Positions 3,301 to 15,356 of a DNA stretch of 15,356 nucleotides are shown here, in pieces. Under the pieces are notes generated by a model that saw nothing but the letters and a program-made list of their open reading frames with translations, searched no databases and had not been told where the DNA came from. This DNA is from Trichoplax adhaerens. Lineage: Eukaryota; Animalia; Placozoa. The stretch lies in contig NW_002060943.1 in assembly GCF_000150275.1 (NCBI RefSeq), positions 2,986,604 to 3,001,959 of the forward strand, in the 5' to 3' direction. The translations under genes and the position numbers were made by a program. The first letter of the stretch is position 1, and each line of letters begins with the position of its first letter.

Positions 3301-4345
3301 CAACTTCAACAACATCGATTTACTTAATACAAAAATCACGACAATCTTTAAATAAATAGTTTTTCAATCGGATTAGTTAATAGTAGCTAAAATAAAACGA
3401 TCTTCACCTCAATATCCAATGCTTATTGCTTTTAAGATGAGATCGGTAGATCAACATAAAACTGTTTGGCTGTTAAATCGATATAGTTCGTTTTTCTCAC
3501 TTTTTATGTACACAATAAATCACTCTTATTCGCTAATAAACTTTAAAATGTATTTAATTTGAAGTAGTTACAGGTGCTAAGTTAGTAAAATTCTACTATC
3601 ACCATTTATTTTCTCTTGAAGGGATTCAGTCTAACCTTATATCGAATCGAATCAATTGTTCTCAGTGGATTAAAGACCTTACCAATAAGAACATCCCATC
3701 ATTACAGATCGCATAAAATAATTCCTTAGTCTAGATATTGAGGCTTCTAGTGGTACAAATGGCTGATATATAATGATAGCTTGTAGTAAGTCTACTCAAA
3801 AAGAAGAAATGATGAGCGAACGGTTATAAAAAACTGTCCGAATTAACTCGACAATCCAGAACGTTGATAGTCCCTGGGGATTAATTAAGGACGCCATTTT
3901 ATTGTAGTTCTTGCCGCGCATCTATACAATCCGTCCCTTTTATTAGATAATAGTAACATTTCGTAGTTCTATTAGCAGTTCTAATTGATTATTTTGATTA
4001 TAGTTTCGAATCAACTAATTTATTTCGTAGATGGACTTCCTCTTAACTTTAGATAAGATAAACGCGTACATTTTCTCAATCTACGATATCTTCATTTAAT
4101 TCGTTAATCAGGATAGATAAACTAATACTTGCACGAATTTGATTTTTAATTTGCACTATGCTGATAGAATAGTCTACTGGGCAGAGTCAAATTTGGCTAC
4201 AATTTCATCTCTTTCACTAGACTACTCTTGGTATTATGATTATATTAGGTGATCGAGTTATTCACTTGTAATGTAGCAGCTGTCTTATTCGAGTTATTAC
4301 CCTCAAACGTTTGTTCTATTTATAGGATAATTCATCAGGTAGCCA
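381..4345 (+). pseudogene. Heavily decayed leucine-rich-repeat (LRR) protein gene relic
   Basis: Plus-strand LRR-like fragments broken by many stops and frameshifts: LKL*ISNNF (~444), NLGNNF (~656), LKTLTLSYYKHEINTIP (1048), VFRN*IKL (~1180), KLRILLKRNFIN (~1389), KCSCHGT (~1464), LKVLD/..NEIDRI (2081), LARNN..KVL (2371), EIDFDNNFLRLGNFNSKIFLLLLYLRLLSLEG (2825-2920), NIDLLNTKITTI (~3311), NLRYLHL (4078). Boundaries are approximate. Confidence 0.55.
2520..2825. mobile_element. ~300-bp segment present only in duplication copy A (insertion in A or deletion in B)
   Basis: Copy B reads directly across this point (...CACAAATAATGAAATTGAC). TATG flanks both ends (2520-2523, 2822-2825), and there is a short inverted repeat TGGATAC (2522-2528)/GTATCCA (2801-2807). 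Confidence 0.4.
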
Positions 4346-4346
4346 A

Positions 4347-4375
4347 GGTTAGGGTTAGGGTTAGGGTTAGCGTTA
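4347..4375 (+). repeat. Interstitial telomeric sequence GG(TTAGGG)3TTAGCGTTA
   Basis: Read directly from the sequence; TTAGGG is the canonical metazoan/ancestral eukaryote telomere repeat. Confidence 0.9.
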
Positions 4376-4613
4376 ATACCATACATCTAGTTGTTTTACG
4401 TTATTTGTGTCCTTATCTAATAAATGGAGCACAAAATAATGGATTTTATGTTGCGGAGAATTGAAATTTTACAGGCTAGCTTACGCATAAAATTATATAG
4501 AAATTATGAATGAAAACTATACAAACCGGTGCTATTTATCTTTATTACTTTAAATATCGTATTATTTACACCTTCTACTAAGATTCAGATATATAACATA
4601 GAGCATAGTAGTA

Positions 4614-6425
4614 ATTAACTATATGGAGAATTCTAACTACCTGTTTTCTACATATTACTGGTGTTTAATAATAAATTAGCTAGAAATAACTTCGTCTTAT
4701 TATAATTAAAAGTGTTTGAAAACCTTACCTCTAAAATGAGTTAGAACACAGTTGTTACGATCATTGGTTGAATTTCTCTTTCAGATAATGAATCAGGTAA
4801 TCCTAAAGAATCCATAAATCAACACAAATAATGAAATTGACTTTGATGGGTAATCCTTGACGATTTGGAAAATTTTAGCAGTGAATTATTTTATTGCTTC
4901 TCTACCTAAAACTCCGAGTCCGTGAAGAAAGGCCACATAAATCAAATGTAATATTTAGAACATTGATGAATTTTTAGTTTTAGCGTGTTGGTTGTTTTAA
5001 AAAAGCAAATCAAATAGTTATAGTATACTCCATATAATAATGAAGATATACGATAAATTAACATATTTCTAGAAAAAATAAACCATTTTTGAAGATTAAA
5101 TAATATTTATGTTGTATTTTTTTCTCTGTAGATTCGTTATCGTCATTCGAAGAATCTAAACTTTTGCAACTTGTTGAAGAATTAGCCTTTTTTGCGTATC
5201 TTAGGGTGTAGAATCAACACTTGTACTAATGATTTTCCAATAAATCACGCTACGAATATTGAGAAAGTCAAATTATAATTATAAGAACACACATTTCAGT
5301 AATAGATACTACTCAAGTACTGATTACAACATAGACATACTACAATAGGAAAGATCACAAGAACTTTTACGTGAATAATTTTTCTATCAATTTGTTAAAG
5401 CTGGTTAAGAAATGATCTTACCCTTAAACATTCAACGATTATCGCTTTTAGTAGTAGACTAACGTTAAATTGTTAGGCTCTTTTCGATTGATATGATTTG
5501 TTTCTTAGCTTTAACAACCGAAAAAATTCAATCTTAGTTGCTAAGATACTCTAAAATATGTCTAATGTTAAGTAGTTACTAGTACTAAGTCAGTACGAAA
5601 TTCTACACTACTATCATCATTTAATAATATTTTCCCTTAAAAGGATCAACTGCTACCTTATGTTGATTCGTACTAGTAATCGTCGGCTAAATACTTATCT
5701 TATTAGTAAGAAAAATTCGATATTTATAGCTCGCATGAAGTAAGTTTCTATCTTGTATATCGAGACTTCTAATATTTAAGTTAAATAATAATTATAATTA
5801 TTAAAAATAAGTTGTACTAAATCAAGTAGAAGACAGAATTAAGTGCGCGAAGGGTAACAAAAACTCTCTAAATGACCTTGACAATCGATAAAGTTAAAAA
5901 TCCTCAAGAGATTAGGAACGCCACTTTATCATAGTCAGTCGTCGCGCGTCTACATAATCTGTGCATTCTATAGAATGAAAACAACACTCCCAATTCCTTT
6001 AACCCTATTTGATTTTTGTGATTGTAACTGTCAACTTAATTAATTCATTTTGTAAGCAAACTTCAGCTCCACCTTTTACAAGATTCATCAATCTACGATA
6101 CCTTCATTTAATTCACTGACCGGGATGGATAAAGTAATATTTGTCTGAATTCATTTATTTCATGCGTTTACATATTTTATTCTAATTACTTTATGATTAG
6201 CAGTAAATTTCATTTCAATTTTACTCGACTTATAATATGTTGATAGGATGGATTATTAGGCAAAGTCAAGTATGGCTACAATTTTATCTCTTTCGTCAGT
6301 CTACTCTCATACTATGATTATATTAGGTAATCGAGTTGCTCACTTGTAATGCTGTTGGATTATTCAAGTTATTACCCTCACAGTAAATGCTTGTTTCATC
6401 CATAGGATAATTTATCGGACAGTTA
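4614..6425 (+). pseudogene. Second, diverged partial copy of the LRR relic
   Basis: Collinear with 2310-4345. Fragments include LARNNFVLL*LKVFENLTS (4676), EIDFDG (~4833), FINLRYLHL (~6084) and KVKYGYNFISF (~6262). Confidence 0.5.
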
Positions 6426-8126: not shown

Positions 8127-9620
8127 CTACTTTTTCATTTTCTTCTTATTGGGCAATTTTTTTAAATTATCCATAGGTTCTTGCCGCTTTAATGGAGCAA
8201 ACTTAGTTAGGGCAACATCCCGTGCTTTCTTATGATTTACAATACACTTCGGATATGTTTTACCCAAAGCTATTCCAGCTTTTTTCAGTACTGCTGCCGG
8301 AGCTTCCCATGGTTGCTGTATGTAATCATTGGATAATTTGGCTATTTCAGGGATCCATTTTCTGACATAATTCCCATCAGAATCGAATCTTTCACCTTGC
8401 GTTACTGGATTAATGATGTAAAAATAAGAAGAAATATCAGCTCCACATCCCGTTATGCGTTGCCAGCTGCAAGAATTTAGAGCTAAATCAGCATCCACAA
8501 GTGTATCCCAAAACCATTCAGCCCCATTTTGCCAAGGAATCAAAAGATGCTTTGTTAAGAATGAAGCTACTATCGTTCTGACTCGATAACTGATTACACC
8601 AGTATTCAATAACTCGCGCATTCCAGCATCTACGATAGGATAGCCAGTTTTACCTTGTTGCCAGAGTTTTAATTTCTCCTTATCCACTTTCCATATCGTT
8701 TCATCAAAATTCAATTTATAACTCTTTTCCGGAAAATCCGGATAGTAATGCAACAGATGGAAGCAAAAGTCTCTCCATCCAAGCTCAGTTAAAAATTTTT
8801 GTGAACTATCCGAAGGTACTGATCGCAAATGAACACTTTCTTTAGCTGTATGCCATACAACAAATGGACTGATCTCACCAAAATGGAGATGTGTTGATAA
8901 CTGAGAGGTTTTACTCGGCCAAACTGTTTCCTTCCCTTTGCGATAATCAACTAATTTATACTTTATAAATTCTTTAAGTTTACGAATTGCTCCATCTTCA
9001 CCTGGGCAACCGATTACTATTTTTAACTCATCTTTCCAATCCTTTTTAGCAGAAACTAAATGCCAAGAATCGAGCGTATCAGTTTGAACTTTGATATCTA
9101 ATGTGTTATTGAATCTTGGTTTATCGTACGGTTTACGAGGTTGGTCTGACGATAAGCAGCGATTCCAGTACATTATATACAATTTAAATGGTTCATCTTT
9201 TGCACTTTTAACCGCCCATGGCTCATATAATAGTCCAGCTTGGAATGACCCGACTGTAACATCATCAACTTTTAACGCTTCTTCAATGGACTGATCTCTT
9301 TTCACAGCATAGGGTTCATAACATCGGTTCCAGTAGACAGCATCTGCCCTACTTTGTAGCAGTACCTGGCGTAAAATTGTAAGTGGGTCTGCACCCCGTC
9401 TTAAAATTAGGGGTATATTGAACTTGAGGAGATCATTCTGCAACGATTTTAAGCTATGATGTAGCCACCACAGACTGGCTTTACCCAATTTCCATTTGCC
9501 AGGCGTTTCTTGATCCAAAATATAAATGATAACAACATGGCCTCGTTTAGCAGCATGAAATAATGCTGGGTTGTCAATTAATCGTAAGTCGTATCTAAGC
9601 CAGACGACTGTACAAACCAT
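8127..9620 (-). CDS. Cryptochrome/photolyase family flavoprotein, paralog A (class III CPD photolyase/plant-CRY-like, 497 aa), intronless, with C-terminal basic NLS-like tail; lesion-binding residues degenerate (cryptochrome-like)
   Basis: Intact ORF with family motifs WLRYDLRLIDNPAL, ASLWWLHHSL, TSQLSTHLHFGEISP, ELGWRDF, WQQGKTGYPIVDAGMREL and WFWDTLVDADLA. It also has the PWEAP...AGIALGKTYP C-terminal segment typical of class III/plant-CRY proteins, and ends in KRQEPMDNLKKLPNKKKMKK. Confidence 0.95.
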   Translation of the reverse strand: MVCTVVWLRYDLRLIDNPALFHAAKRGHVVIIYILDQETPGKWKLGKASLWWLHHSLKSLQNDLLKFNIPLILRRGADPLTILRQVLLQSRADAVYWNRCYEPYAVKRDQSIEEALKVDDVTVGSFQAGLLYEPWAVKSAKDEPFKLYIMYWNRCLSSDQPRKPYDKPRFNNTLDIKVQTDTLDSWHLVSAKKDWKDELKIVIGCPGEDGAIRKLKEFIKYKLVDYRKGKETVWPSKTSQLSTHLHFGEISPFVVWHTAKESVHLRSVPSDSSQKFLTELGWRDFCFHLLHYYPDFPEKSYKLNFDETIWKVDKEKLKLWQQGKTGYPIVDAGMRELLNTGVISYRVRTIVASFLTKHLLIPWQNGAEWFWDTLVDADLALNSCSWQRITGCGADISSYFYIINPVTQGERFDSDGNYVRKWIPEIAKLSNDYIQQPWEAPAAVLKKAGIALGKTYPKCIVNHKKARDVALTKFAPLKRQEPMDNLKKLPNKKKMKK

Positions 9621-9880
9621 TTCTTGTCAATTTTTTCCAATTTAGCAGTTAACACATTCAGTAGTCATTTAGCATATGCACTTTGATAAACGGTGCATGT
9701 GATATTTAGTGTAATTTACACTTCATCACTAGCTAGCAAGAAATACCTAGCAGACCGTTTGGCCTAATAAGACAAGAAGATGCTAAAGGAAGCTCCTTGT
9801 TGAAGTATACTTTATAATCGACTTGATCCCTTTACTAAATATCATGCAATATGTTTATTTTATTAGGAATTCAGGATAAG

Positions 9881-10166
9881 CTAAATTACGTCCAATTTTT
9901 TAGAACAAATCAAACCCTTAACGTTGGTCTCCAATTTGAGCCAGTAATTGCTTTGCAGCTTTAGGCCTTTACAGATTTGGAATTTGACAACTTGGGCAGA
10001 ATCTTCGTCCAAGCCTCCACCCTCGTATACTTCGCTATATTAGCAATTTAGAATAAACAAATTCAACTAAATTACGTCCAACTCTTTCTCCAATTTTGAA
10101 AAAAGTAATTGCTTTGTAGCTTTAGGTCTTTGCAAGTTTGGAATTCGACAACTTGGATATGATCTT
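9881..10166 (+). repeat. Imperfect direct repeat, copies 9881-10005 and 10067-10166
   Basis: Both copies read CTAAATTACGTCCAA...TCTCCAATTT...AGTAATTGCTTTG.AGCTTTAGG.CTTT.CA..TTTGGAATT.GACAACTTGG. Confidence 0.9.
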
Positions 10167-10530
10167 GATCAATGACTGTATCGTTGTACTCTCTGCTACC
10201 GCTGATGATATCGTTGTTAATTTTAAATTGTAGATTGAGCAATCCAAAAGGAGAAACCCATTGAAATCTTCATACAACTGCTAAGGACGATCAAAGGCAT
10301 TGATTTAGCATATAGATCAGGTCTACTCTAGCAGAAGCTTGCTCCAAGCTGTCGAGGGAAGCTGCTGCAAATGATGGAAGCAAGCCCGATACGACCGTAT
10401 CATAGCAATACCGTATCTCCACGGTGTTGTTTGTAATCCAGGCTGTCAGTATCTTGCTCAATGCTCAGTATTAGGACCGCACTCTTACACTAAACAGTCT
10501 AGTATCATAGTAAAGGCGAAAAGAATCGAG

Positions 10531-10550
10531 CTACTTGTTCGAACAAGTTT
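10531..10550. promoter_or_regulatory. Candidate p53-family response element CTACTTGTTC|GAACAAGTTT containing a perfect 16-bp palindrome
   Basis: Two RRRCWWGYYY decamers with zero spacer (8/10 and 10/10 matches, both CWWG cores intact). ACTTGTTCGAACAAGT at 10533-10548 is self-complementary. It lies between the divergent photolyase starts. Confidence 0.4.
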
Positions 10551-11004
10551 GCGGTGGTAATTAATTCATCAGCTGCGCTTGAGCTCTTCTGCTAGTAGCT
10601 GCTGCACAGACTACAGAAATTACCTTAGCAAATGCCATAAAGCTCCTACAACGTGTCTAAAACTTTTTACAGTGTAAGCTGAACTTGCCGCAATCTTGTT
10701 TAGTGCTGCGTAAGATATAATATTGCAATCAATAGTTTGTAGCTGATGATCTTGATCGCTATTAACTAGAACACGAATGCTGCAGCTCTGCTTGTGATGG
10801 CATTAGTAGTCCCCGGTAATAAAGACGTAGTATATCCGTTTTCACTCTGTCAAAATCCTTAGCATAACAGTTCTCCTCTTGGATCGGATGCAGGATAATA
10901 ACGATCATTTCGGTTGGGTTTATATCAATGTAGATGATCGAACTGACCAAAATTAAACCAAATCAGCATCATTGGCTGTTGCAGAATAGAAACCCTACTT
11001 CCTC

Positions 11005-12546
11005 ATGTCATCTTCAAAGATACCTTGCACGCTGGTGTGGTTACGCCGAGATTTAAGATTAATTGATAATCCTGCATTATTTCATGCTGCAAAACGTGGT
11101 CAACTTATTACTGTTTACATTTTCGATGAAGATTGCTCTGGCAAAAGGAGAACAGGCCAAGCTTGTTTATGGTGGCTGTATCATAGCTTGAAATCATTGC
11201 GTAATCAACTAAGCCAATGGAATATTCCTCTCATTGTGAAAAGCGGTAAAGATGCATTTACTATTTTAAAAAAGTTGCTCGATAGGTATAACGCTGATGC
11301 AATTTATTGGAATCGTTGTTATGAACCATTTGAATATAATCGAGATTACTCGATTGAAAAAAGATTTGTGGCAAGAAAGATCAAAGTTGAAACCTACCAA
11401 GATAGGGTACTGTATGAACCATGGAAGGTCAAGAACGGTAAAGGACAACCATTTCAGCTGTTTCCATGCTACTGGAATCAGTGTTTGTCTTTACCACAGC
11501 CTCGGAAGCCTTACGATAAACCAAAATTTACTGTTCATAACCAAGGCTGTGTGGAATATAAGTATGACGATGCTGGTGTATGGCAATTATTGGCTTCAAT
11601 AGCAGATAATGATACGAGTACAAGGCTACAAGATTTCTGGCATCCAGGCGAGGAGGGAGCAATTCAAAAACTAAAACGCTTTATGAAGAATTCTTTAAAG
11701 GTTTATTCAGAAAAAAGAGATTGCATTTGGTTAGATGCAACCTCCAATCTATCACCTTACTTACATTTCGGTGAGATTAGTCCTTTTACCATTTGGCATA
11801 CAGCTTGTTTTATGCGCCATTCAACTACGAGATCAATATCCGTTCCATTGCATTGTACAAAGCGATACCTTACCGAACTAGGATGGAGGGAATTCACATG
11901 TCATTTACTATTTCATTACCCAGATTTACCTGAAAAAAGTTTTAAATCCAATTTTCATCAGTTAAAGCTAGAAATTGATGAGGAGAAATTGCATGCATGG
12001 CAAAATGGTAGCACCGGTTATCCAATTGTCGACGCAGGCATGAGACAACTCTCGCAAGCTGGTTTTATGCCTAATCGCGTCAGGATGATTGTGGCTTCAT
12101 TTTTAATTATGCATTTGTTAATCCCATGGCAGAAAGGAGAAGAATGGTTTTGGAATAGATTGGTGGATGCCGACTTAGCTCAAAGTGTATGCAATTGGCA
12201 ATGGATAGCTGGTTGTGGACCTGATGTAGCACCTTATTTTCGTATGTTCAACCCTGTAATCCAAGGCGAAAAATTTGATGCTGAAGGATACTATGTACGA
12301 AAATGGATACCTGAAATTGCTAAATTACCTAATTCTTATGTTCAAAAACCGTGGGAAGCGCCTCCAACAATGTTAAAAATAGCAAATATAACGTTAGGAA
12401 AGACCTATCCTCGACCAATAGTAGAACATAAAGTAGCTCGTGAACTAGCATTGGCTACGTATTCACAATTAAAGCGTAAGCGGGAACCACCGAGCAACAA
12501 GAATAAGAAGCGTAAACGAGCTAAGAAAGAAAAGTTAAAAGACTAA
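11005..12546 (+). CDS. Cryptochrome/photolyase family flavoprotein, paralog B (class III CPD photolyase-like, 513 aa), intronless, with C-terminal basic NLS-like tail
   Basis: Intact ORF with WLRRDLRLIDNPAL, WHPGEEGA, TSNLSPYLHFGEISP, ELGWREF, GFMPNRVRMIVASF, LVDADLA..WQWIAGCGPDVAPYFRMFNP and PWEAP...LGKTYPRPIVEH. Ends in KRKREPPSNKNKKRKRAKKEK. Confidence 0.95.
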   Translation: MSSSKIPCTLVWLRRDLRLIDNPALFHAAKRGQLITVYIFDEDCSGKRRTGQACLWWLYHSLKSLRNQLSQWNIPLIVKSGKDAFTILKKLLDRYNADAIYWNRCYEPFEYNRDYSIEKRFVARKIKVETYQDRVLYEPWKVKNGKGQPFQLFPCYWNQCLSLPQPRKPYDKPKFTVHNQGCVEYKYDDAGVWQLLASIADNDTSTRLQDFWHPGEEGAIQKLKRFMKNSLKVYSEKRDCIWLDATSNLSPYLHFGEISPFTIWHTACFMRHSTTRSISVPLHCTKRYLTELGWREFTCHLLFHYPDLPEKSFKSNFHQLKLEIDEEKLHAWQNGSTGYPIVDAGMRQLSQAGFMPNRVRMIVASFLIMHLLIPWQKGEEWFWNRLVDADLAQSVCNWQWIAGCGPDVAPYFRMFNPVIQGEKFDAEGYYVRKWIPEIAKLPNSYVQKPWEAPPTMLKIANITLGKTYPRPIVEHKVARELALATYSQLKRKREPPSNKNKKRKRAKKEKLKD

Positions 12547-13611
12547 TATGGAGCTTTGTCTACATCACGGGATATACGTGTACAAAGATGGATTGATCAC
12601 TGTTTATTGCGGTGTTGCCTTGCAATGCTCCGTACTCTGGTATTACGGTGTAGCTCTGTTTAATGTAAATAGATTGGATAGTTTAATTTAATACTGCTAT
12701 TAATTATTGTTCTCGAATTGAGTCGCCATTGACCGAAGCTTACGCTTGAGCTTTATTTCAAGTATGTTGTCTTCAATTAAAATTGAGGTAATCTTTTCTT
12801 ACTAATAATGCGATTCCATTCTAAATTGCTTTTCGAGTAATCAATATTAATCCACGATCAACTAGAAATACTTGGCACTTTTCAGTACCATGACAGCTTC
12901 TATTTATATAGGTATCTATAACGTTGTGCCATATACCTTGGTAAAACTTGGTGTTGTAGTTGAATCACGATAATCTTTATACCTTCACTAAATTAAACAC
13001 ATTGTCCTTCTAGATCGAATTTTGAGTTTATTATTATTATTAATCACACATATCCGTATATAACGACCGATGACAAGAATTAATACTGCTAGTTCTAGGT
13101 CGATGCTATCCTATCATGGCTATAATGGCCAATGACTAGATCCATCTAGAGGTTGACAGTAGATTACTAGGAAAATCATGCATTGCAATAGCTCACTGTA
13201 TGCGTGCATGCTTAACTGGTCAAATTTAGGCGAAATTGAAAAGTTTGCTGTGATATTTCTGTATATTCATGGAGTACAATTGGGTCCAAATTTCTACCTG
13301 CCAACAGTGGGAGGACACGAATCAGACCACTAAAGAAACCATGGATTAATAGTGGTCAAGTCATTCTACGCGTATAGTCATAGACTACTATACTAGAAGA
13401 TGTCCATTGGATTCTGAAGACTTTTATGTCGTATCGAAGTCATTAATAGAAGATTAGAAGGATAACAGAATGGATCATGTACCTAAAGAACCTTTCTATT
13501 TCTACTCGTACGCACACTCTACTCTCGTATCATAAGGTACCTCCCTATTTTAGAGATTCTGTTCTCTCCACAGTTTACGCCTACTGCATTCTGAGATAAG
13601 TGATCATCCGA

Positions 13612-13978
13612 TCTGATTGCATTAAATTACCAGAGATTACTGCACAATAGTTTTACCTAATGCAAATGCAAGTGAATTGGATTTGATTTGGACCGGGTAA
13701 AAATTGTGCAGTAGGTCCCGTCTGATTGCATTATTACTGTACATTACCAGAGACGACTGCACAATAGTTTTACCTAATGCAAATGCAAGAGAATTAAAAT
13801 TTGATTTGGACTGGGTAAAAATTGTGCAGTAGGTCCCGTCTGATTGCATTACATTACCAGAGACGACTGGACAATAGTTTAGCCTAATACAAATCCGAGT
13901 GAATTGGATTTGATTTGGATTGGGTAAAAATTGTGCAGTAGGTCCTGTCTGATTGCATTACATTACCAGAGACGACTG
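13612..13978. repeat. Tandem repeat (minisatellite) of ~109-bp units with internal inverted repeats, at least 3.3 copies, truncated by the gap
   Basis: TCTGATTGCATTA recurs at 13612, 13721, 13839 and 13948 (periods 109, 118, 109). Each unit contains ACTGCACAAT..TTTTACC (slightly degenerate in unit 3) followed by GGTAAAAATTGTGCAGT. Confidence 0.95.
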
Positions 13979-14031: not shown

Positions 14032-15356
14032 AGGGATTCAGTCTAACCTTATATCGAATCGAATCAATTGTTCTCCGTGGATTAAAGACCTTACCAATAA
14101 GAACATCCCATCATTACAGATCGCATAAAATAATTCCTTAGTCTAGATATTGAGGCTTCTAGTGGTACAAATGGCTGATATATAATGATAGCTTGTCGTA
14201 AGTCTACACAAAAAGAAGAAATGATGAGCGAACGGTTATAAAAAACTGTCCGAATTAACTCGACAATCCAGAACGTTGATAGTCCCTGGGGATTAATTAA
14301 GGACGCCATTTTATTGTAGTTCTTGCCGCGCATCTATACAATCCGTCCCTTTTATTAGATAATAGTAACATTTCGTAGTTCTATTAGCAGTTCTAATTGA
14401 TTATTTTGATTATAGTTTCGAATCAACTAATTTATTTCGTAGATGGACTTCCTCTTAACTTTAGATAAGATAAACGCGTACATTTTCTCAATCTACGATA
14501 TCTTCATTTAATTCGTTAATCAGGATAGATAAACTAATACTTGCACGAATTTGATTTTTAATTTGCACTATGCTGATAGAATAGTCTACTGGGCAGAGTC
14601 AAATTTGGCTACAATTTCATCTCTTTCACTAGACTACTCTTGGTATTATGATTATATTAGGTGATCGAGTTATTCACTTGTAATGTAGCAGCTGTCTTAT
14701 TCGAGTTATTACCCTCAAACGTTTGTTCTATTTATAGGATAATTCATCAGGTAGCCAAGGTTAGGGTTAGGGTTAGGGTTAGCGTTAATACCATACATCT
14801 AGTTGTTTTACGTTATTTGTGTCCTTATCTAATAAATGGAGCACAAAATAATGGATTTTATGTTGCGGAGAATTGAAATTTTACAGGCTAGCTTACGCAT
14901 AAAATTATATAGAAATTATGAATGAAAACTATACAAACCGGTGCTATTTATCTTTATTACTTTAAATATCGTATTATTTACACCTTCTACTAAGATTCAG
15001 ATATATAACATAGAGCATAGTAGTAATTAACTATATGGAGAATTCTAACTACCTGTTTTCTACATATTACTGGTGTTTAATAATAAATTAGCTAGAAATA
15101 ACTTCGTCTTATTATAATTAAAAGTGTTTGAAAACCTTACCTCTAAAATGAGTTAGAACACAGTTGTTACGATCATTGGTTGAATTTCTCTTTCAGATAA
15201 TGAATCAGGTAATCCTAAAGAATCCATAAATCAACACAAATAATGAAATTGACTTTGATGGGTAATCCTTGACGATTTGGAAAATTTTAGCAGTGAATTA
15301 TTTTATTGCTTCTCTACCTAAAACTCCGAGTCCGGAAGAAAGGCCACATAATCAAA
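14032..15356 (+). repeat. Near-identical direct copy of 3620-4946 (terminal contig; probably allelic haplotype or mis-scaffolded duplicate)
   Basis: Constant offset of +10412. The differences I saw were three substitutions near the start and single-base indels at the contig extremities. Confidence 0.95.
14759..14787 (+). repeat. Interstitial telomeric sequence (same tract within the near-identical duplicate)
   Basis: Identical to 4347-4375 at offset +10412. Confidence 0.9.

What the first reader, a model, noticed from the sequence alone, without database searches (positions are those of the whole stretch)
8127..12546. Divergent photolyase/cryptochrome pair with complementary loss of function: a candidate sensor + lesion-binding system
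Seen, by manual alignment to E. coli photolyase motifs: paralog A keeps the photochemistry residues (Trp triad W310/W363/W386 and flavin-N5 Asn N382) but has substituted lesion-pocket residues. Paralog B keeps the pocket (R238, E291, W294, N357, R358, M361, W400) but lost the Asn (S394) and the distal triad Trp (L322). Both ORFs are intact although the neighbouring gene relics are decayed, which suggests purifying selection. Established: cryptochromes arose repeatedly from photolyases, with plant CRYs deriving from class III-like enzymes. Inference: this is an independent sub- or neofunctionalisation in an animal-like host, with A as a new blue-light receptor and B as a CPD-binding or atypical repair enzyme, co-regulated from one upstream region.
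Basis: partly seen in the sequence, partly recalled or inferred. Interest (0 to 1): 0.85.

Follow-up and report, generated by a model that had tools for sequence, protein, structure and literature searches.

The report
Placozoan bacterial-type photolyase paralogs, diverged
The window holds two of at least three to four intact photolyase genes that a placozoan (Trichoplax) acquired from bacteria; the genes themselves are published, but I found no report that each copy has changed a different, otherwise invariant active-site residue, or that one copy looks like a newly arisen cryptochrome.

Summary
Observation confirmed. Paralog A (8127-9620, minus strand, 497 aa) and paralog B (11005-12546, plus strand, 513 aa) are intact, intronless and head-to-head, and 55% identical.

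The genome is Trichoplax adhaerens or a very close relative. The genes are class III CPD-photolyase homologues; the best solved relative is Agrobacterium PhrA (4U63).

They are already published as bacterial-to-Trichoplax transfer candidates PhrB_1-4 (Driscoll 2013) and as a "CPDIII photolyase" (Deppisch 2022).

New here:
- It is a family, not a pair. C lies 5.7 kb downstream, and a C-like D lies 284 kb away.
- The family arose from one acquisition. Its members are the only cryptochrome/photolyase genes in the genome.
- The genes are under purifying selection (dN/dS 0.08-0.28). GC3 is host-like, and there are basic, NLS-like C-terminal tails.
- None keeps the full set of residues invariant in 116 bacterial relatives. 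A has a remodelled lesion pocket plus Leu at site 377. B has N378S and W306L. C and D have R226S, E274S and W306L.

A is probably not a CPD repair enzyme and may be a cryptochrome. B and C probably still repair. "Decayed gene relics", a sensor-plus-binder system and co-regulation are not supported. Expression evidence is weak.

The parts
8127..9620 (-). Paralog A, 497 aa, intronless class III photolyase homologue. FAD-binding residues, Trp triad (W310/W363/W386) and N5 Asn (N382) are kept. CPD-pocket residues are changed (K230, Y345, T349, R388, Y401) and site 377 is Leu (L381).
8130..8183 (-). Lys-rich C-terminal tail of A (about residues 480-497, ...KKLPNKKKMKK). It extends beyond the end of the bacterial homologues and looks like a nuclear localisation signal.
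   Evidence: C-termini compared with bacterial homologues; NLS function is inferred
9621..11004 (.). 1384-bp region between the head-to-head genes. GC is 0.38, as high as the coding parts. It contains a 95-nt direct repeat (9943-10037 / 10104-10198) and a 16-bp palindrome at 10533-10548. No coding signal was found.
11005..12546 (+). Paralog B, 513 aa, intronless class III photolyase homologue. The CPD pocket is intact (R238, E291, W294, N357, R358, M361, W400, R413). The N5 Asn is replaced by Ser (S394) and the distal triad Trp by Leu (L322).
11005..11320 (+). First ~100 codons of B, homogenised with paralog C (and D). Nucleotide identity is 99% in this assembly and about 95% in Trichoplax sp. 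H2, against about 75% for the rest of the gene. This is a gene-conversion tract.
12478..12543 (+). Arg/Lys-rich C-terminal tail of B (...KNKKRKRAKKEKLKD), absent from bacterial homologues and NLS-like.
   Evidence: function inferred

Best explanation
The window carries two members, A and B, of a placozoan-specific gene family of class III CPD-photolyase homologues.

Origin and status:
- A single bacterial gene entered the nuclear genome of a placozoan ancestor. The nearest relatives today are marine Alphaproteobacteria-type sequences at 44-50% identity.
- The gene took on host composition, stayed intronless and gained basic, NLS-like C-terminal tails.
- It duplicated locally into A, B and C, plus a C-like D.
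- These are the only cryptochrome/photolyase-family genes in the genome, and they are maintained by purifying selection.

Divergence after duplication:
- A kept the flavin site, the Asn at flavin N5 and the Trp triad. It replaced five invariant lesion-contact residues and put a hydrophobic Leu at site 377. Most likely it still binds FAD and is photoreduced but no longer repairs CPDs, so it behaves like a cryptochrome or another non-repair flavoprotein.
- B keeps the CPD pocket but has Ser at the N5 position and Leu at the distal Trp.
- C and D keep the Asn but have Ser at R226 and E274.
- B and/or C are the likely nuclear CPD repair enzymes, possibly with altered efficiency.

Shown: gene structure, family, residues, selection, single origin, synteny. 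Inferred: all biochemical roles, nuclear targeting and expression.
For: Family and class:
- Pfam PF00875 and PF03441.
- Best solved relative is 4U63, Agrobacterium class III PhrA, at E 1e-128 to 1e-130. Plant CRYs follow at about 1e-95 and class I at 1e-65 to 1e-75.

Host and integration:
- C is 98.8% identical to a Trichoplax sp. H2 protein.
- The locus is collinear with H2 contig NOWV01000073.1 at 97.65%.
- The genes sit on a 13.26-Mb scaffold of a 105.6-Mb genome, next to multi-exon neighbours.
- GC3 is 0.31.

Single origin:
- The placozoan proteins are monophyletic (SH-aLRT 100) inside the bacterial set, as ((A,A_X),(B,(C,D))).

Only family members in the genome:
- Own-genome searches with PF03441, PF00875 and TIGR00591 hit only these loci. 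Driscoll 2013 and Deppisch 2022 agree.

Selection:
- A against the orthologue in an unnamed run: dN/dS 0.08.
- A, H1 against H2: 0.28.
- B, H1 against H2: 0 nonsynonymous and 2 synonymous changes.
- C, H1 against H2: 0.26.
- B against C: 0.21-0.24.

Residues:
-.
- A's changes at bacterially invariant columns are concentrated in pocket segments, 10 of 22 against 3 of 81 elsewhere (Fisher p 5e-6).
- They are shared by the 78%-identical orthologue P0004.
- At site 377, polar residues stabilise FADH- and repair, while hydrophobic residues are typical of animal CRYs and 6-4 photolyases (PMC9356274). A has Leu; the bacteria have Asn or Ser.
- M345/W384 is the CPD-recognition pair (PMC7560933 Table 1). 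A has T/R, and H in the orthologue.

Tails:
- Basic C-terminal tails are absent from the bacterial homologues.

Arrangement:
- The head-to-head A/B layout is also present on the contig of the distant orthologue.
Against: - No biochemical or genetic test exists.
- Expression is only weakly supported. In the one on-record RNA library (X11), low-depth contigs lie on B and on parts of the intergenic region, and none lie on A. Other runs cover everything and may be DNA.
- A keeps Asn at N5, whereas plant and insect cryptochromes have Asp or Cys. It also keeps E274 and W277, so a changed lesion specificity is not excluded.
- Four of A's changed pocket positions differ between the two A orthologues. 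That fits relaxed constraint on the pocket better than a new, precise ligand.
- B's N378S matches an E. coli mutant reported as crucial-site defective (Xu et al. 2008, title cited in PMC9356274). So B may not repair.
- Single-site E. coli mutants at R226 and E274 reduce repair but, as I recall, do not abolish it. C's activity is therefore uncertain.
- The donor lineage is not resolved.
Confidence: 0.62

Rival explanations
1. All paralogs, A included, are still working CPD photolyases. The substitutions are tolerated variants. The copies differ only in expression, timing or dosage, that is, ordinary subfunctionalised repair genes.
For: - All keep the FAD-binding residues, W277, R342 and the proximal and middle Trp.
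- All are under purifying selection.
- All have NLS-like tails suited to acting on nuclear DNA.
- From my own recollection of the E. coli literature, single-residue mutants at R226, E274 and M345 lower quantum yield but do not abolish it.
Against: - A has five simultaneous changes at positions invariant in 116 bacterial homologues, including both members of the M345/W384 CPD-recognition pair. It also has a hydrophobic residue at site 377, which destabilises FADH-.
- The changes are concentrated in the pocket.
- B's Ser sits at the Asn reported as crucial for repair.
Confidence: 0.15
2. One reading: A, a blue-light sensor, and B, a catalytically dead CPD binder, form a two-part, co-regulated sensor plus lesion-binding system.
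For: - The residue pattern in A and B.
- The head-to-head arrangement is conserved in H2 and in the distant orthologue's contig.
- Both genes are under purifying selection.
Against: - A third and a fourth paralog exist, with a third pattern of changes.
- There is no evidence of an A-B interaction, and photolyases are monomers.
- The intergenic sequence is not conserved between the divergent species.
- The only candidate regulatory motif is compatible with chance.
- In RNA run X11, contigs cover B but not A.
Confidence: 0.08
3. The genes are bacterial contamination or symbiont DNA in the assembly, or recently inserted, decaying pseudogenes.
For: - The nearest non-placozoan relatives are all bacterial.
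- The genes have no introns.
- The reference assembly has gaps and a suspicious duplicate next to the cluster.
Against: - The same three-gene arrangement is present in an independent assembly of Trichoplax sp. H2, on a 358-kb contig with eukaryotic neighbours.
- GC3 of 0.31 matches the host.
- Identity to any bacterium is at most 50%.
- The tails are of eukaryotic type.
- ORFs are intact in three taxa, with dN/dS 0.08-0.28.
Confidence: 0.02

Closest known systems
PhrB_1-4 of Trichoplax adhaerens (Driscoll et al. 2013, PMC3641634); 'CPDIII photolyase' of T. adhaerens (Deppisch et al. 2022, PMC9498864)
   Same: These are the same genes. They are four bacterial-like photolyase copies on a large eukaryotic scaffold, proposed as lateral transfers and as the only family members in the genome.
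   Different: The passages I read (term searches, not the supplements) treat them as interchangeable repair enzymes, or as one 'all-rounder' photolyase. In those passages, and in my literature searches, I found no report of the paralog-specific active-site changes, the selection figures, the basic tails, the gene conversion or the conserved head-to-head layout.
Agrobacterium tumefaciens PhrA, class III CPD photolyase (PDB 4U63)
   Same: It is the best solved relative (E 1e-128 to 1e-130). It shares the two-domain fold, the FAD-binding residues and the classical Trp positions. It also shares Trp at the two positions that I recall forming the alternative route in PhrA.
   Different: PhrA and the 116 nearest bacterial homologues have the complete canonical pocket, N378 and W306. 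Each placozoan paralog lacks two or more of these, and each has an added basic C-terminal tail.
Plant cryptochromes CRY1/CRY2 (PDB 1U3C, 6K8I)
   Same: They are the second-best solved relatives. They are a precedent for a class III-like photolyase that loses the CPD pocket and becomes a photoreceptor. A, like them, has lost M345 and W384.
   Different: Plant CRYs have Asp at the N5 position, V/Y at the recognition pair and long C-terminal extensions. A has Asn, T/R and an 18-residue basic tail. Both proteins score far below the NCBIfam plant-CRY cut-off (378-386 against 603.85 bits).
E. coli photolyase N378 mutants (Xu et al. 2008, cited in PMC9356274)
   Same: B carries Ser at exactly this position, with an otherwise intact pocket.
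   Different: That is an engineered class I enzyme. B is a natural class III-type protein conserved under selection, so compensation elsewhere is possible. It has not been tested.

Membership tests
Cryptochrome/photolyase family | N-terminal photolyase alpha/beta domain plus C-terminal FAD-binding helical domain | tested here: met
   PF00875 (E 1e-42 to 5e-44) and PF03441 (E 1e-78 to 1e-83) cover both proteins end to end.
Cryptochrome/photolyase family | Conserved FAD-contact residues (E. coli Y222, T234, S235, S238, R278, R344, D372, D374) | tested here: met
   All are identical in A, B and C.
Class III CPD photolyase | Closest to PhrA-type sequences rather than to class I, class II, DASH or 6-4 types | tested here: met
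   4U63 is the top solved hit by more than 30 orders of magnitude. The proteins nest within PhrA-like bacterial homologues. They fall below the cut-offs of the class I, 8-HDF, DASH, class II and plant-CRY NCBIfam models.
Class III CPD photolyase | CPD-recognition pair Met345/Trp384 and lesion contacts R226, E274, W277, N341, R342, R397 | tested here: not met
   This status is for A, which has K, E, W, Y, R, T, R, Y, so five of the eight are changed. B has all eight. C and D have S at R226 and at E274.
Class III CPD photolyase | Asn next to flavin N5 (E. coli N378) | tested here: not met
   This status is for B, which has S394, also in Trichoplax sp. H2. A (N382) and C (N390) keep the Asn. It is invariant in 116 bacterial homologues.
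Class III CPD photolyase | Classical Trp triad W382-W359-W306 | tested here: inconclusive
   A is complete. B, C and D have Leu at the distal position but keep Trp at the E. coli 316 and 365 equivalents. I recall, without a checked source, that these form the alternative route in PhrA.
Class III CPD photolyase | Light-driven splitting of cyclobutane pyrimidine dimers | not testable with these tools
   Needs enzyme assays or complementation.
Cryptochrome (functional class) | No DNA repair activity; light-dependent signalling | not testable with these tools
   For A this is only inferred, from pocket loss and Leu at site 377.
Cryptochrome (functional class) | N5-proximal Asp (plant type) or Cys (insect type) | tested here: not met
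   A has Asn and B has Ser. Type II animal CRYs also keep Asn (PMC9356274), so this does not exclude a CRY role.
Cryptochrome (functional class) | C-terminal extension beyond the photolyase homology region | tested here: inconclusive
   There are 18-25 residue basic tails. They are short and look more like an NLS than a regulatory tail.
Plant cryptochrome (TIGR02766) | Score above the curated cut-off of 603.85 bits | tested here: not met
   378.5 bits (A) and 385.8 bits (B).

The most novel reading that the evidence does not exclude
Paralog A is an independently evolved animal cryptochrome. It would be a blue-light flavoprotein sensor, derived within Placozoa from a horizontally acquired bacterial class III photolyase, and the only flavin photoreceptor of an animal that lacks canonical cryptochromes. 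B and C/D would be the specialised remnants of the repair function.
Probability: 0.3. Interest if true: 0.8.

Novelty: new member of a known kind. Interest (0 to 1): 0.5.

Why it matters
Placozoans are among the simplest animals, and this genome has no cryptochrome or photolyase other than these bacterial-derived genes. If A has become a light sensor, it would be a further independent photolyase-to-cryptochrome transition. It would also be one that started from a horizontally transferred gene in an animal, with its still photolyase-like sisters lying a few kb away as natural controls.

That makes the residue changes behind the transition directly testable by swapping them. The relevant sites are the pocket, site 377 and the N5 residue.

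It also bears on how Trichoplax copes with UV. None of its copies has the full canonical catalytic set. If all copies turn out to be ordinary repair enzymes, the finding reduces to an already published gene transfer.

Tried and rejected
- **Contamination or symbiont DNA:** rejected on H2 synteny, eukaryotic neighbours, GC3 and the basic tails.
- **Young pseudogenes:** rejected on dN/dS and intact ORFs in three taxa.
- **'Decayed gene relics' in the flanks or between the genes:** tblastn with A, B and C found no extra photolyase fragments in the window. Nine ORF pieces gave no Pfam hit. No tRNA or Rfam hit was found.
- **p53-type element at 10531-10550 (another first-reader note):** it matches 18 of 20 positions. 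The expected count is 0.43 per window, and 69 of 200 shuffles give at least one match. It is absent from the distant orthologue's intergenic region. It is compatible with chance.
- **Conserved regulatory blocks between H1 and the distant species:** none found.
- **Expression:** Runs X1 and X4 cover the genes and the spacer alike, so they may be DNA. RNA run X11 supports B weakly and A not at all. I do not claim expression.
- **Exact-sequence look-up of A in other assemblies:** nothing on record.
- **Literature:** a search for N378S found nothing. The PhrA structure paper PMC4416854 is not held, so statements on PhrA's alternative Trp route, and on quantum yields of E. coli pocket mutants, rest on my own recollection.
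- **Not run:** structure prediction and complex prediction. Family membership is already clear, A plus B exceed the 1000-residue limit, and I do not claim that they bind.


Full report
**What is there**

The window has only two long ORFs: 8127-9620 on the minus strand (A, 497 aa) and 11005-12546 on the plus strand (B, 513 aa). They sit head-to-head across 1384 bp. Both carry the two photolyase domains, PF00875 and PF03441, end to end. They are 55% identical. Both are full length relative to bacterial homologues, so they have no introns. The window has no tRNA or Rfam match.

**Where it comes from**

The window is G000:C1414:2986604-3001959. That is a 13.26-Mb scaffold in a 105.6-Mb, 1414-contig genome, so the genome is eukaryotic. 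The best non-self protein hit is a "deoxyribodipyrimidine photo-lyase [Trichoplax sp. H2]". That protein is 98.8% identical to a third paralog in the same scaffold. The whole locus is collinear with H2 contig NOWV01000073.1 at 97.65% nucleotide identity.

**The residue observation**

I took E. coli phr from NC_000913. Literature numbering is the index in the 472-aa product minus one. I then aligned it with the placozoan proteins.

| E. coli site | A | B | C | D (partial) |
|---|---|---|---|---|
| R226 | K230 | R238 | S235 | S |
| E274 | E279 | E291 | S287 | S |
| W277 | W282 | W294 | W290 | W |
| W306 (distal Trp) | W310 | L322 | L318 | L |
| N341 | Y345 | N357 | N353 | N |
| R342 | R346 | R358 | R354 | R |
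| M345 | T349 | M361 | M357 | M |
| W359 | W363 | W375 | W371 | W |
| N378 (flavin N5) | N382 | S394 | N390 | in gap |
| W382 | W386 | W398 | W394 | in gap |
| W384 | R388 | W400 | W396 | in gap |
| R397 | Y401 | R413 | R409 | in gap |

The 116 nearest bacterial homologues calibrate this. R226, W277, W306, N341, R342, M345, N378, W382, W384 and R397 are invariant in all 116, and E274 is E in 103 and Q in 13. These are therefore derived changes at sites that do not otherwise vary.

**It is a family, not a pair**

An own-genome search found a third intact gene, C (503 aa, plus strand, L001:649-2160), about 5.7 kb downstream of B and just outside the window. It also found a fourth copy, D, 284 kb away, which runs into an assembly gap. 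C keeps the N5 Asn and M345/W384/R397. It has Ser at R226 and at E274, and Leu at W306. D is 98% identical to C and shares these states. So no copy has the complete canonical set. Searches with PF03441, PF00875 and the class II model TIGR00591 hit only these loci. These are the only cryptochrome/photolyase-family genes in the genome.

**Class and origin**

- The best solved relative of both A and B is Agrobacterium PhrA, the class III CPD photolyase 4U63, at E 1e-128 to 1e-130. Plant CRY1/CRY2 follow at about 1e-95 and class I enzymes at 1e-65 to 1e-75.
- Both proteins fall below every NCBIfam cut-off, including the plant-CRY model.
- Outside Placozoa, the closest proteins among 5.8 billion are bacterial at 44-50% identity. 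The named ones are Thalassobaculaceae, Oceanibaculum, Hyphobacterium and a Rickettsiales MAG.
- I built a quick maximum-likelihood tree of 64 sequences, taking every second bacterial hit and E. coli as outgroup. It leaves out H2 duplicates, plant CRYs and PhrA, for which I had no sequence handle. The placozoan proteins form one clade (SH-aLRT 100) inside the bacterial set, as ((A,A_X),(B,(C,D))).
- That fits one acquisition followed by duplication. The donor is not resolved.
- GC3 is 0.31, like the host, so the transfer is old.

**Already published**

Driscoll et al. 2013 listed four bacterial-like photolyases, PhrB_1-4, on large T. adhaerens scaffolds as lateral-transfer candidates, and found no other family member (PMC3641634). 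Deppisch et al. 2022 reported for T. adhaerens "only a CPDIII photolyase", described as an all-rounder (PMC9498864). I read these papers by term search and did not open their supplements. In the passages I read, and in my other searches, I found no description of the paralog-specific active-site changes.

**Are the genes alive?**

Nei-Gojobori estimates:

| Comparison | dN/dS | Note |
|---|---|---|
| A, H1 vs H2 | 0.28 | 12 nonsynonymous, 11 synonymous |
| B, H1 vs H2 | 0 | 0 nonsynonymous, 2 synonymous |
| C, H1 vs H2 | 0.26 | |
| A vs A_X | 0.08 | dS saturated |
| B vs C | 0.21-0.24 | |

- A_X is P0004, an orthologue 77.6% identical to A. It comes from an unnamed Logan run that is presumably another placozoan lineage.
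- All three proteins end in Lys/Arg-rich tails of 18-25 residues that the bacterial homologues lack. These look like nuclear localisation signals, which is an inference. None has an N-terminal presequence.
- Candidate poly(A) signals lie 230 nt after B's stop and about 350 nt after A's stop.

Expression itself is only weakly supported. Two runs cover genes and spacer alike and may be DNA. In the on-record RNA library X11, low-depth contigs lie on B (11318-12855) and on parts of the spacer, and none lie on A.

**What A looks like**

- Of 105 columns at least 97% invariant in the bacterial homologues, A differs at 13.
- Among the 103 of those columns that align to an E. coli residue, A differs at 10 of the 22 in the known flavin/lesion-contact segments, against 3 of the 81 elsewhere (Fisher p 5e-6). 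I defined the segments after seeing the data, so this is descriptive.
- B (2 of 22) and C (3 of 22) show no such concentration.
- A_X shares K, Y and T, and has H and F where A has R and Y. The remodelling therefore predates the split of these lineages and has persisted under strong overall constraint.
- Four of the changed positions differ between the two A orthologues. That fits a pocket no longer used for a lesion better than a new, precise ligand site.
- At site 377, A and A_X have Leu, while the bacteria have Asn or Ser. Wen et al. 2022 showed that polar residues at this site stabilise FADH- and raise repair, while hydrophobic ones destabilise it and are typical of animal CRYs and 6-4 photolyases (PMC9356274).
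- PMC7560933 Table 1 lists M/W as the CPD signature, H/W for 6-4 and animal CRY, Q/Y for DASH and V/Y for plant CRY. A's T/R fits none of these.
- A keeps Asn at N5, which is unlike plant CRYs (Asp) and insect CRYs (Cys) and like type II animal CRYs.

I conclude that A is very probably not a CPD photolyase and is a plausible, unproven, cryptochrome-like protein.

**What B and C look like**

B has the full pocket, with Ser at the N5 Asn. [quoted passage not shown] From memory, the mutant studied there was N378S; it bound substrate but was inactive. I could not read that paper.

C has Ser at R226 and at E274. As I recall, alanine mutants at those sites in E. coli lower binding and quantum yield but do not abolish them.

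The Leu at W306 in B, C and D may not matter. All paralogs keep Trp at the E. coli 316 and 365 equivalents. I recall, from the PhrA structure paper that is not held here, that these form PhrA's alternative electron route. The triad is also reported not to be always essential for function in E. coli (PMC7560933).

B and/or C are thus the likely repair enzymes, but neither is canonical.

**The 'system' idea**

The two kinds of loss cannot complement each other in trans, because one molecule needs both the pocket and the Asn. Nothing indicates that A and B bind each other.

The head-to-head layout is old. On the A_X contig, the divergent neighbour begins with a B-like N-terminus. However, the spacer shows no conserved block between the two species. 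Co-regulation is therefore possible but unsupported.

**Other structure in the locus**

- The first ~100 codons of B and C are 99% identical in this assembly and about 95% identical in H2, against about 75% for the rest of the gene. This is gene conversion at the 5' ends, and D shares the conserved N-terminus.
- Just past the window end, the reference has a 1304-N gap. It is followed by a ~99% copy of window 9422-11319 (the A 5' end, the spacer and the B 5' end) joined to C.
- H2 has no such copy upstream of C.
- Contigs from three runs show a different upstream sequence joined at 11014, matching D and H2.
- Depth in the DNA-like run X1 is not doubled over the spacer.
- Together with a 10,412-bp direct repeat (3620-4944 = 14032-15356 at 99-100%), this points to an assembly artefact or an H1-specific rearrangement. 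It does not affect A or B.

**Verdict**

Two parts of the interpretation are right: the proteins are class III-like, and they diverged within an animal. It is wrong about gene relics.

The genes and their bacterial origin are known. The pattern of active-site divergence, and the possibility that A is a cryptochrome born from a transferred gene, appear to be new and are easy to test.

Noticed in passing
G000:C1414:3004848-3006359 (L001:649-2160), about 5.7 kb downstream of B, outside the window: Third intact paralog C (503 aa, plus strand). It keeps N378, M345 and W384 but has Ser at R226 and E274 and Leu at W306. It is 98.8% identical to the annotated Trichoplax sp. H2 photolyase.
   Followed up: yes
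L004 (G000:C1414:3285307-3286446): Fourth copy D, 98% identical to C, on a 1.2-kb contig island between N runs. Its upstream flank matches the region upstream of C in H2 at only 90-92%. It is either a separate recent duplicate or a misplaced divergent haplotype. The part after residue ~378 lies in a gap.
   Followed up: partly
window 11005-11320 vs L001/L008: Gene-conversion tract. The first ~100 codons of B and C are 95-99% identical at the nucleotide level, while the rest of the genes is about 75% identical. In the H1 assembly, all C differences from H2 within the first 1140 nt lie in the first 246 nt.
   Followed up: yes
L006:1-4360 (just past the window end): A 1304-N gap is followed by a ~99% copy of window 9422-11319 (the first 66 codons of A, the spacer and the B 5' end) fused to C. 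It is absent from H2 and not supported by read contigs. It is probably an assembly chimera at the shared B/C 5' repeat.
   Followed up: partly
window 3620-4944 and 14032-15356: A 99-100% direct repeat with 10,412-bp spacing runs to the window end and brackets the A-B pair. Each copy holds a (GGTTAG)4.8 telomere-like microsatellite (4347-4375 and 14759-14787). More diverged third copies of sub-segments lie at 2344-2500 and 6088-6351. H2 has different sequence at the position of the second copy.
   Followed up: partly
window 13621-13978: A 109-bp tandem repeat of 3.2 copies lies downstream of B. It is expanded in Trichoplax sp. H2 (L008:7747-8651). The H1 assembly's collinearity with H2 ends exactly here.
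   Followed up: partly
window 9621-11004: The spacer between A and B has GC 0.38, as high as the coding sequence and above the flanks (0.30-0.34). It holds a 95-nt direct repeat (9943-10037 / 10104-10198, 75% identity). It is covered in part by contigs of an RNA library (9798-10139, 10577-10931). No Pfam match was found. It may be long 5' UTRs or a non-coding transcript.
   Followed up: partly
window 10531-10550: p53-like element CTACTTGTTCGAACAAGTTT (18 of 20 positions, containing a 16-bp palindrome). It is conserved in H2 but absent from the distant orthologue's spacer, and its occurrence is compatible with chance.
   Followed up: yes
L009:1-183 (Logan run SRR30664516): The contig that carries the 78%-identical A orthologue also carries, head-to-head about 1 kb away, the start of a B-like gene (MAPKISCTLVWFRRDLRVIDNPALYHAAKRG...). 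The divergent A/B arrangement is therefore ancient.
   Followed up: partly
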